A stretch of 62,974 nucleotides of DNA, filler included, from Octopus bimaculoides (GCF_001194135.2; 6 parts of 4 records of this genome joined end to end with filler, not necessarily neighbours in it); one strand, 5' to 3'; shown: positions 52,397-52,990, numbered from the whole stretch's first letter. Made by a program: numbers and translations. Notes: generated by a model from the letters alone, not told the origin.

Positions 52397-52400
<4 letters not shown>

Positions 52401-52990
52401 GCTGGGTAGGGATGCTAACCTCTCCTGTTCGAAAATATAAGGACACATATCGTGTGTCGTACAGCCAGCAGGAGATGATGTCTACTACGGCTAAACAACA
52501 GTAGAATTCGCCCTAAAAAGGAACTGCCACACTAGGTTGGCTGCAACTGAATATCTCTTGTTGAGAGTTTTAGGAACCACAATGTTTCTATTTTATTAGA
52601 TCAGTGACTGTAAGTCGCTTAGAAAATTATGTATATTTTCGAACGTATATTTAGCAGTACCATCTCATCCGAAAAATGATTCTGTGCCGACGAAGGGAAA
52701 TAACCCTGAAACCGTACGGTCGACAGATACTGCTTTGTGCTGAGTGGGGATGCCAACCTCCCCTGTTCGAAAATATAAGGACACAGATCGTGCATCATAT
52801 AGCCAGTTGTAGACGATGTCTCCTGGAGCTAAACAACAGTGGCATTCGCCCCAAAATGGGACTACCACATTAGATTGGCAAAAACTCGTAATTTTAAAGT
52901 GCTGCTAGGAATATCTCTCGCTGAGATATTTAAGAACAACAATGCTTGTATTTTATTAGATCGGTGATTGTGAATCGCTTAAAAAATTAT
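52397..52990 (+). mobile_element. Partial tandem (about 1.7 units, period 338 bp) of family X with a central hammerhead, embedded in (TA)n
   Basis: ttgtgctg at 52397 and 52735; collinear copies end in aaaattat at 52630 and 52990; (TA)n at 52365-52397 and 52989-53007. Confidence 0.88.
52681..52727 (+). ncRNA. Minimal type I hammerhead ribozyme motif with U4C lesion
   Basis: UCUGUG-CCGACGA-AGGG aaauaa CCCU-GAA-ACCGUACGGU-C-GACAGA. Perfect 4-bp helix II, 10-nt palindromic helix III, GUC triplet, 5-bp helix I with G.G closing mismatch. Confidence 0.8.

What the first reader, a model, noticed from the sequence alone, without database searches (positions are those of the whole stretch)
52397..52990. 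Retrozyme-like family X: 338-nt non-coding unit with a hammerhead showing full covariation between two loci
Seen: this 1.7-unit tandem in (TA)n and the element at 4640-4907 (-) share collinear sequence downstream of an HHR at the same position. Their HHRs differ in every helix yet stay paired: helix I UCUGU/ACAGA vs UCCAGA/UCUGGA, helix II AGGG/CCCU vs GAG/CUC, helix III palindrome ACCGUACGGU vs ACUAGU; both have GUC triplets. Established: animal non-LTR retrozymes are tandem 150-400 nt HHR-bearing units expressed as circRNAs and thought to be mobilised by PLEs; partial tandems are expected from reverse transcription of a circular template. Inference: an old, structurally selected cephalopod retrozyme family, with a candidate helper class (Neptune-type PLE) present in the same window. 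I cannot verify whether it is already catalogued.
Basis: partly seen in the sequence, partly recalled or inferred. Interest (0 to 1): 0.9.

Follow-up and report, generated by a model that had tools for sequence, protein, structure and literature searches.

The report
Decayed retrozyme-like tandem repeat in intron
A 593-bp non-coding block (1.75 copies of a 338-bp unit) sits inside a TA microsatellite in a receptor-gene intron; it looks like an old, probably dead copy of a known kind of ribozyme-carrying retroelement, but its hammerhead core is damaged and the claimed covariation could not be tested.

Summary
The physical observation holds. Window 52398-52990 (+) is a direct repeat of period 338 nt, with one full unit and 0.75 of a second. 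The units are 82-84% identical (K2P 0.21), and the block is bounded exactly by (TA)16 and (TA)8.

- The core reads CCGACGA, not CUGANGA (U4 is C).
- The helix I closing pair is G.G, and 10.1-11.1 is A-U.
- Rfam finds no hammerhead at E<=10.
- The predicted best fold is a plain hairpin, 6 kcal/mol better than the hammerhead fold.
- The locus holds only one motif, so it cannot release a monomer by double self-cleavage.

The second locus is masked (N), and no other copy could be retrieved from any collection. Covariation, family size and the "cephalopod" label are therefore untested. No RT or GIY-YIG remnant lies within the 7.9 kb.

Best reading (about 0.55): an old, inactive partial-tandem copy of an animal non-LTR retrozyme or Penelope-pLTR-derived element. 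It was inserted by target-primed reverse transcription into a (TA)n tract, in the sense strand of an intron of a CRF-receptor-like GPCR gene. This is a known kind and of modest interest.

The parts
52365..52397 (.). Upstream (TA)16.5 tract, the left half of the presumed (TA)n target site
   Evidence: TRF gives 100% matches. The repeat block starts at its last base.
52398..52735 (+). Unit 1, a complete 338-nt repeat unit. It is non-coding and 41% GC.
   Evidence: No Pfam domain in any frame. Fold z-score is -3.2 to -3.6.
52427..52439 (+). Left arm (GTTCGAAAATATA) of a 13-nt perfect inverted repeat that closes the large domain of the predicted monomer fold
   Evidence: It lies in the 24-nt stretch that is identical in both units.
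52632..52644 (+). Right arm (TATATTTTCGAAC) of the same inverted repeat. It shows that the 100-nt segment absent from unit 2 belongs to the unit.
52681..52727 (+). Type-I hammerhead-like motif. Helix I is 52681-52685 paired with 52723-52727. The 5' core CCGACGA is 52687-52693, with C52688 at position 4 where U is expected. Helix II is 52694-52697 paired with 52704-52707. GAA (positions 12-14) is 52708-52710. Helix III with its loop, ACCGUACGGU, is 52711-52720. C17 is 52721, and the predicted cleavage site lies between 52721 and 52722.
   Evidence: Read directly and found by the descriptor scan. No Rfam hit.
52736..52990 (+). Unit 2, a partial unit (about 0.75). It is truncated at the unit's own TA-rich site, before its hammerhead region.
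52887..52908 (+). A 22-nt segment present in unit 2 and absent from unit 1
   Evidence: Alignment. The repeat spacing changes from 338 to 360.
52991..53007 (.). Downstream (TA)8.5 tract, the right half of the presumed (TA)n target site
51105..51240 (+). Context: a coding exon (AG|G ... CAG|GT) for TM6-ECL3 of a CRF-receptor-like class B GPCR. The repeat block lies about 1.15 kb downstream, in the following intron, on the same strand.
   Evidence: Sequence and splice sites. Pfam 7tm_2 E 0.002, which is below the gathering score. PDB CRF1R E 2e-6. One 67%-identical database protein carrying PF00002.

Best explanation
The block 52398-52990 is an old, now inactive genomic copy of a small non-autonomous retroelement of the animal non-LTR retrozyme / Penelope-like-element (PLE) pLTR-derived kind.

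Inferred life cycle, taken from the family literature and not shown here: arrays of about 340-nt units are transcribed, a type-I hammerhead in each unit cuts the multimer into monomers, host ligase circularises them, and a PLE-type reverse transcriptase/GIY-YIG endonuclease copies the circle or an uncut multimer into nicked DNA.

What this locus shows:
- The cDNA was longer than one unit (1.75 units) and runs through the hammerhead cleavage site. The template was therefore a circle or an uncleaved multimer.
- The block was integrated into a (TA)n microsatellite.
- Its 3' end lies at the only TA-rich stretch of the unit (UUAUGUAUAU). This fits priming by microhomology with the nicked (TA)n target, which is an inference.

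Since insertion the copy has decayed. The two units differ by about 18%. The hammerhead core carries U4->C, and the closing pair of helix I is lost. With only one motif, the locus can no longer release a monomer. It lies in the sense orientation in an intron of a CRF-receptor-like GPCR gene, where loss of self-cleavage would be harmless or favoured.
For: - Partial tandem of a 338-nt unit at 82-84% identity.
- Both ends abut (TA)n tracts exactly, with a chance of about 6e-5. (TA)n is the preferred target drawn for PLEs and reported for Naiads, and a microsatellite bias is attributed to Neptune (PMC8557442).
- Unit size, GC of 41% and lack of coding capacity match the published definition: 150-450 bp units, GC below 45-50%, dimers to multimers (PMC7229834).
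- The unit folds better than all 100 shuffles, z -3.2 to -3.6. A 13-nt perfect inverted repeat ties the hammerhead-side segment to the rest of the unit.
- The only hammerhead-like motif in the 7.9 kb falls inside this unit. It has helix sizes of 5, 4 and 3 bp and a 4-nt palindromic loop 3, the architecture described for metazoan type-I hammerheads (PMC4209133). Expected chance motifs are 0.053 per piece.
- Of 19 chance metagenome matches to the same core plus helix III strings, none has both helices I and II.
- No RT or endonuclease remnant lies nearby, so the block is non-autonomous rather than a pLTR of an intact PLE.
Against: - The motif breaks the hammerhead consensus at U4 (C). From my recollection of classical mutagenesis (Ruffner, Stormo and Uhlenbeck 1990, not re-read here), changes at this core position strongly reduce cleavage.
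- The 1.1/2.1 position is G.G, and 10.1-11.1 is A-U rather than the highly conserved G-C.
- Rfam hammerhead models give no hit at E<=10.
- The nearest-neighbour best fold is a plain hairpin at -16.0 kcal/mol, against -9.8 for the three-way junction. The two C's that replace U4 and U7 each strengthen that hairpin.
- With one core mismatch allowed, about 0.4 such motifs are expected by chance in a 58-kb window (scaled).
- Only one motif is present, and both strands fold equally well.
- No second copy of the unit could be found anywhere. Multi-copy status, covariation and expression are all unshown.
Confidence: 0.55

Rival explanations
1. A relic of a (TA)n-targeting PLE-dependent non-autonomous element, or a solo pLTR tandem, that never had a working hammerhead. 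An example would be a derivative of the Naiad clade. The hammerhead-like motif would be a chance or vestigial near-match, and the conserved structure, if any, would be the plain hairpin.
For: - (TA)n is the documented preferred target of Naiads, which lack canonical hammerheads although some carry core-like strings. In cephalopods Naiads are reported as long-inactivated remnants (PMC8557442). That would fit the 18% divergence, if the taxon is right.
- The core is non-consensus, Rfam is silent, and the hairpin is 6 kcal/mol better than the hammerhead fold.
Against: The motif has all three helices in the canonical metazoan sizes, a palindromic helix III and 10 of 11 fixed core bases. About 0.002 such motifs are expected per unit by chance. 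None of the 19 chance string matches had helices I and II.
Confidence: 0.22
2. An in-situ tandem duplication (a minisatellite-like event) of ordinary intronic sequence next to TA microsatellites. It would not be a mobile element, and the hammerhead resemblance would be chance.
For: - The piece is full of micro- and minisatellites.
- No other copy was found in the piece or in any collection.
- About 0.4 relaxed motifs are expected per 58 kb (scaled).
Against: - Both ends of the block coincide with (TA)n tract edges, with a chance of about 6e-5. A slippage duplication does not predict this.
- The flanks show no similarity to the unit.
- The unit is unusually structured.
Confidence: 0.1
3. Two independent same-orientation insertions of a roughly 235-nt SINE-like element with an A/TA-rich tail, separated by about 100 nt of unrelated DNA that happens to contain the hammerhead-like motif.
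For: Both copies end at ...GCTTA(G/A)AAAATTAT followed by TA-rich sequence.
Against: - The 'spacer' carries the perfect 13-nt complement of a box inside the repeated part.
- No tRNA-like head was found.
- Copy 2 is not preceded by (TA)n.
Confidence: 0.05
4. A domesticated intronic hammerhead, analogous to the amniote RECK/CTCL/DTNB ribozymes, acting on the GPCR pre-mRNA.
For: The motif is in the sense orientation in an intron, 1.15 kb downstream of an exon. Amniote intronic hammerheads are thought to derive from retroelement hammerheads (PMC6155905).
Against: - The core is mutated.
- There is no evidence of conservation.
- The surrounding unit has decayed at a neutral-looking 18%, with 28 transitions and 13 transversions.
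Confidence: 0.03

Closest known systems
Animal non-LTR retrozymes (Cervera and de la Pena 2020, PMC7229834; Li, Clavereau and Pollet 2026 preprint, 10.64898/2026.07.22.740005)
   Same: - Tandem, non-coding, low-GC units of a few hundred bp, here 338 bp.
- A type-I hammerhead-like motif once per unit.
- A self-paired predicted monomer.
- Dimers and partial arrays occur in the published families too.
- No LTR, PBS or PPT.
- Thought to be mobilised by PLEs, of whose pLTRs they are relatives.
   Different: - Only one motif at this locus.
- The core has C at position 4 and there is no 1.1-2.1 pair.
- Not recognised by Rfam.
- Copy number and circRNA expression are unknown.
- Retrozymes are described from a mussel, but I found no description of a cephalopod family in the searchable library.
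Hammerheads in the pLTRs of Penelope-like elements (Cervera and de la Pena 2014, PMC4209133; Craig et al. 2021, PMC8557442)
   Same: - Partial tandem organisation.
- Insertion into a microsatellite, (TA)n.
- Type-I topology with a small palindromic helix III that suggests action as a dimer.
- High sequence variability of the motif.
   Different: - No RT or GIY-YIG ORF within 2.2 kb upstream or 5 kb downstream.
- No 30-40-bp 'tail' detected.
- Helix III here is 3 bp plus a 4-nt loop, as in canonical metazoan hammerheads, not the minimal form.
- 10.1-11.1 is A-U, not the conserved G-C.
Newt satellite 2 and Schistosoma Sm-alpha hammerhead repeats (classical type-I hammerhead tandem repeats of about 330 bp)
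   Same: Unit length of about 330-340 bp, a type-I motif, and a short helix III that requires dimeric action.
   Different: Those are large arrays with a consensus core and demonstrated cleavage. This is a 1.75-unit dispersed copy with a damaged core.
Amniote intronic hammerheads (Rfam HH9/HH10; RECK, CTCL, DTNB)
   Same: Sense-strand intronic position of a type-I hammerhead-like motif derived from a retroelement.
   Different: Those are ultraconserved with intact cores. Here there is no evidence of conservation and the core is mutated.

Membership tests
Hammerhead ribozyme (type I) | Conserved core C3-U4-G5-A6-N7-G8-A9 ... G12-A13-A14 ... U16.1-H17 | tested here: not met
   The sequence reads C-C-G-A-C-G-A ... 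G-A-A ... U-C. Position 4 is C (52688). All other fixed positions are present.
Hammerhead ribozyme (type I) | Three helices (I, II, III) radiating from the core, with helix I open-ended | tested here: met
   Helix I is 5 bp, helix II is 4 bp with a 6-nt loop, and helix III is 3 bp with a 4-nt loop. Such a motif is expected 0.053 times per 7.7 kb in shuffles.
Hammerhead ribozyme (type I) | Closing pairs next to the core: 1.1-2.1 paired, G10.1-C11.1, A15.1-U16.1 | tested here: not met
   1.1/2.1 is G52722.G52686, which is unpaired. 10.1-11.1 is A-U. 15.1-16.1 is A-U and correct. G10.1-C11.1 is described as highly conserved (PMC4209133).
Hammerhead ribozyme (type I) | Short helix III with a palindromic loop (metazoan type-I architecture, dimer-capable) | tested here: met
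   ACCGUACGGU is a perfect palindrome. The feature is described in PMC4209133.
Hammerhead ribozyme (type I) | Match to the Rfam hammerhead covariance models (RF00163, RF00008, RF02275-7) | tested here: not met
   No hammerhead match at E<=10 in 7.9 kb or in the 131-nt sub-window 52640-52770.
Hammerhead ribozyme (type I) | The hammerhead fold is energetically accessible | tested here: inconclusive
   The three-way junction scores -9.8 kcal/mol, against -16.0 for an alternative hairpin, and helix III has probability about 0. Nearest-neighbour models ignore core tertiary contacts, and alternative inactive folds are normal for monomeric retrozyme or viroid RNAs.
Hammerhead ribozyme (type I) | Compensatory changes in the helices across related copies | not testable with these tools
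   The second locus is masked. No further copy was found in metagenome, viral or prokaryote genome collections, or through ORF look-ups.
Hammerhead ribozyme (type I) | Self-cleavage at GUC| | not testable with these tools
   This needs an in vitro transcription assay.
Animal non-LTR retrozyme | Tandem repeats of 150-450 bp units (dimers to multimers) | tested here: met
   Period 338 nt, 1.75 units. The definition is in PMC7229834.
Animal non-LTR retrozyme | A hammerhead in each unit, so that two motifs flank a releasable monomer | tested here: not met
   One motif only. Unit 2 ends 100 nt before its hammerhead position, and there is no motif upstream of unit 1.
Animal non-LTR retrozyme | Low GC (below 45-50%), non-coding, no LTR/PBS/PPT | tested here: met
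   GC is 41%. The longest ORF is 67 aa and has no homologue. No Pfam domain in six frames.
Animal non-LTR retrozyme | Highly self-paired predicted monomer | tested here: met
   z -3.6 for the monomer permuted to start at the cleavage site and -3.2 as it lies in the genome. No shuffle out of 100 folds as well. The minus strand folds equally well, z -3.5.
Animal non-LTR retrozyme | Dispersed multi-copy family in the genome, co-existing with PLEs | not testable with these tools
   No eukaryote genome collection is available. There is no other copy in the 7.9-kb piece.
Animal non-LTR retrozyme | Expression as linear and circular RNA of unit length | not testable with these tools
   This needs RNA data (Northern, RNase R, RT-PCR with divergent primers).
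Penelope-like element (pLTR of an autonomous copy) | Adjacent ORF with RT and GIY-YIG endonuclease | tested here: not met
   Six-frame Pfam scan of 50186-58070 gave no RT or GIY-YIG hit at E<=1.
Penelope-like element (pLTR of an autonomous copy) | Partial tandem structure and microsatellite, (TA)n, insertion bias | tested here: met
   The literature is (PMC8557442).
Penelope-like element (pLTR of an autonomous copy) | [quoted passage not shown] | tested here: not met
   Local alignments of 150-nt flanks to either unit, on both strands, score no better than shuffles.

The most novel reading that the evidence does not exclude
The 338-nt unit represents a so-far undescribed retrozyme family that targets (TA)n. 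Either its hammerhead tolerates C at core position 4 (a natural active U4C variant), or this copy has been co-opted as a sense-strand intronic ribozyme or hairpin that affects processing of a CRF-receptor-like GPCR pre-mRNA.
Probability: 0.05. Interest if true: 0.6.

Novelty: new member of a known kind. Interest (0 to 1): 0.25.

Why it matters
If the family is confirmed genome-wide, it would add a (TA)n-targeting lineage to the catalogue of animal retrozymes. I found no cephalopod retrozyme family described in the searchable literature, although the taxon itself is unverified here.

It would also provide a junction-level example of integration. The 3' end of the copy lies at the unit's own TA-rich site, next to a (TA)n target. 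That bears on how circular or multimeric ribozyme RNAs are primed and integrated by PLE machinery.

As it stands, this single decayed copy is an ordinary transposon relic in an intron, and it gives no evidence on ribozyme selection.

Tried and rejected
Searches that found nothing:
- Rfam cmscan at E<=10 on the piece and on a 131-nt sub-window gave no hammerhead. The mir-297, mir-3149 and similar hits are microsatellite artefacts.
- Exact 22-23-mers from the conserved parts of the unit had 0 hits in JGI metagenomes, IMG/VR and GTDB genomes.
- A hammerhead-string pattern in metagenomes (same helix III, C or U allowed at core positions 4 and 7) gave 19 hits. All are GC-rich chance matches without helices I and II.
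- I used the 67-aa spurious ORF across the unit junction as a handle to pull related copies out of the protein collection. There were no candidates. Exact look-ups of two window ORFs were not on record.
- I used the GPCR exon to reach orthologous loci or to identify the species. It gave only one 67%-identical 76-aa protein on a 537-bp contig, so taxon and orthologues stayed out of reach.
- Six-frame Pfam scans for PLE, LINE or transposase remnants found none.
- ARAGORN found no tRNA-like SINE head.

Ideas tested and dropped:
- A short match between the upstream flank and the unit (AACAGTAGA) could have been a PLE 'tail'. It is not better than shuffles.
- Strand asymmetry of folding, as a clue to the functional strand, showed none.
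- CpG depletion as an age or methylation clue: observed/expected is about 0.95 everywhere, so it is uninformative.
- A MITE or DNA-transposon reading was rejected because the block has no terminal inverted repeats (by inspection).

Full report
WHAT IS THERE

Within the piece 50186-58070, positions 52398-52990 (+) form a direct repeat of period 338 nt. Unit 1 (52398-52735) is complete. Unit 2 (52736-52990) covers about three quarters of a unit and carries a 22-nt extra segment at 52887-52908. Ungapped blocks are 82% and 84% identical. The gapped alignment gives 41 differences in 231 aligned positions (28 transitions, 13 transversions; K2P 0.207). TRF did not report the repeat at its default scoring.

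The block is bounded on the left by a perfect (TA)16.5 (52365-52397) and on the right by (TA)8.5 (52991-53007). The piece has about a dozen (TA)>=4 tracts. The chance that both ends of a block fall within 2 nt of such tract edges is about 6e-5. The whole 593-bp block therefore looks like one insertion into a pre-existing (TA)n tract. No other copy or fragment of the unit occurs in the 7.9 kb, and the flanks are unrelated to it.

THE HAMMERHEAD-LIKE MOTIF

At 52681-52727 the plus strand reads UCUGU-G-CCGACGA-AGGG-AAAUAA-CCCU-GAA-ACC-GUAC-GGU-C|G-ACAGA.

My descriptor required helix I of at least 4 bp, helix II of at least 3 bp, helix III of at least 3 bp, GAAA, UH, and at most one mismatch to CUGANGA. 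It finds this as the only such motif on either strand of the piece. Dinucleotide-preserving shuffles give 0.053 motifs per piece and none with a perfect core in 300 shuffles. That scales to about 0.002 per 338-nt unit, but also to about 0.4 per 58-kb window, so the motif alone is not decisive. Its location inside a retrozyme-sized tandem unit is what makes it more than chance.

The helix sizes (5, 4 and 3 bp) and the 4-nt palindromic loop 3 are those described for metazoan type-I hammerheads that act as dimers (PMC4209133).

- The 5' core is CCGACGA, so position 4 is C where U is conserved.
- The base pair that should close helix I (1.1-2.1) is G.G.
- 10.1-11.1 is A-U rather than the highly conserved G-C.
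- Rfam's covariance models report no hammerhead at E<=10 in the 7.9 kb or in a 131-nt sub-window.
- RNAfold prefers a plain hairpin (-16.0 kcal/mol), in which the core segment GCCGACG pairs with the 3' strand of helix III. The three-way junction scores -9.8, and helix III has essentially zero probability in the ensemble.
- The two C's at positions 4 and 7 each convert a G.U into a G-C in that competing hairpin.
- From my recollection of classical mutagenesis (Ruffner, Stormo and Uhlenbeck 1990, not re-read here), substitutions of U4 strongly reduce cleavage.
- The locus contains a single motif, because unit 2 stops 100 nt short of its own. Even an active ribozyme could not excise a monomer from a transcript of this locus.

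IS THE 338-NT UNIT REAL?

One alternative is two SINE-like copies separated by a spacer. However, the segment present only in unit 1 (52633-52735) carries the exact complement of a 13-nt box (GTTCGAAAATATA, 52427-52439, paired with 52632-52644) that lies in the part shared by both units. In the predicted fold this pairing closes the main domain.

The monomer folds better than all 100 shuffles, with z -3.6 when permuted to start at the cleavage site and -3.2 as it lies in the genome. The minus strand does as well, z -3.5, so the fold does not tell which strand matters. ARAGORN finds no tRNA-like head. The block has no terminal inverted repeats (by inspection).

CODING CAPACITY AND NEIGHBOURS

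The longest ORFs across the element are 59-67 aa, and the 67-aa one has no relative in the protein collection. Six-frame Pfam scans of the whole piece give no RT, GIY-YIG or any other credible domain. The block is therefore not the pLTR of a recognisable autonomous PLE within 2.2 kb upstream or 5 kb downstream.

One real gene feature is present. It is an exon at 51105-51240 (+) with AG|G and CAG|GT boundaries. It encodes TM6-ECL3 of a class B GPCR:
- Pfam 7tm_2 positions 201-246, E 0.002, which is below the gathering score as expected for one exon.
- PDB CRF1 receptor residues 288-331, E 2e-6.
- One 67%-identical database protein carrying PF00002.

The repeat block lies about 1.15 kb downstream, in the following intron, on the sense strand.

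RELATED SEQUENCES

I could not retrieve any other copy:
- Exact conserved 22-23-mers gave nothing in JGI metagenomes, IMG/VR or GTDB genomes.
- A hammerhead-string pattern gave 19 metagenome hits. All are chance matches with no helices I and II.
- ORF handles were not in the protein collection.
- The GPCR exon gave no near-identical protein, so neither orthologous loci nor the species could be reached.

Covariation, copy number, expression and the label 'cephalopod' therefore remain untested.

MECHANISM

The best-supported reading is an old insertion of a non-autonomous retroelement of the animal non-LTR retrozyme / PLE-pLTR-derived kind. This class is described as follows:
- It forms tandem, low-GC, non-coding units of 150-450 bp, each with a type-I hammerhead.
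- The units are transcribed, self-cleaved, circularised by host ligase and copied by a retroelement RT into tandem cDNAs (PMC7229834).
- A 2026 preprint shows that such elements are sister to PLE pLTRs (10.64898/2026.07.22.740005).
- PLEs characteristically insert as partial tandems and prefer microsatellites. (TA)n is documented for Naiads, and a microsatellite bias is attributed to the Zn-finger-like linker of Neptune (PMC8557442).

Shown here: the copy is longer than one unit and reads through the cleavage site, and it sits in (TA)n.

Inferred:
- The template was a circle or an uncut multimer.
- Priming used microhomology between the nicked (TA)n and the unit's only TA-rich stretch (UUAUGUAUAU, 52628-52637 in unit 1), which is exactly where unit 2 ends.
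- The helper was a (TA)n-preferring PLE. Neptune and Naiad cannot be told apart here.

The 18% divergence between units implies either an old insertion or a heterogeneous template.

RIVALS

- (a) A PLE-dependent element that never had a working hammerhead (Naiad-type), with a chance or vestigial motif. I give this about 0.22.
- (b) An in-situ duplication with a chance motif. It is disfavoured by the exact (TA)n boundaries.
- (c) Two SINE-like insertions. It is disfavoured by the long-range complementarity.
- (d) A domesticated intronic hammerhead. It is disfavoured by the damaged core and the neutral-looking decay.

VERDICT

If real, this is one more member of a known kind, represented here by a decayed and almost certainly inactive copy. 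The claim that made the finding exciting, full covariation between loci, is untested. Interest is modest.

Noticed in passing
window 51105-51240 (+): A coding exon with canonical splice sites encodes TM6-ECL3 of a CRF-receptor-like (secretin-family) GPCR. The rest of the piece downstream holds no recognisable next exon, so the following intron is longer than 6.8 kb.
   Followed up: yes
window 52686-52720 (+): The core segment GCCGACG can pair with the helix III 3' strand CGU-ACGGU to form a 16-bp imperfect hairpin that is 6 kcal/mol more stable than the hammerhead fold. The two non-consensus or variable C's (positions 4 and 7) each turn a G.U of this hairpin into G-C.
   Followed up: partly
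window 53708-53717 and 55567-55696: Runs of 10 and 130 N lie inside the piece. These are assembly gaps, one within a 20-bp minisatellite and one next to (CT)n/(TA)n, so repeat lengths there are not reliable.
   Followed up: no
window 53621-53801 (+): A 20-bp minisatellite (CAGCCATCCATCCATCTAGT), about 9 copies, nested in a CCAT-rich tract and interrupted by an assembly gap.
   Followed up: no
window 50197-50362, 51589-51659, 55425-55491, 56711-56932, 57913-57983: Rfam 'mir-297', 'mir-466', 'mir-3149' and 'mir-1277' matches (up to 43.6 bits, all far below the gathering scores of 81-100 bits) fall on TG/TA/TATG microsatellites. They are low-complexity artefacts.
   Followed up: partly
window 53976-54059 (+): A sub-threshold match to the C/D-box snoRNA U54 model (27.7 bits, against a gathering score of 40; E 0.085) in the same intron and on the same strand as the gene. 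It is probably chance, but intronic snoRNAs are common.
   Followed up: no
window 50186-58070: Microsatellites are very dense: (TA)n, (AG)n of 150 bp, (GT)n, (TATC)n, (GTAT)n and (CT)n. CpG observed/expected is about 0.95 at 34% GC, so there is no CpG depletion in this region.
   Followed up: partly
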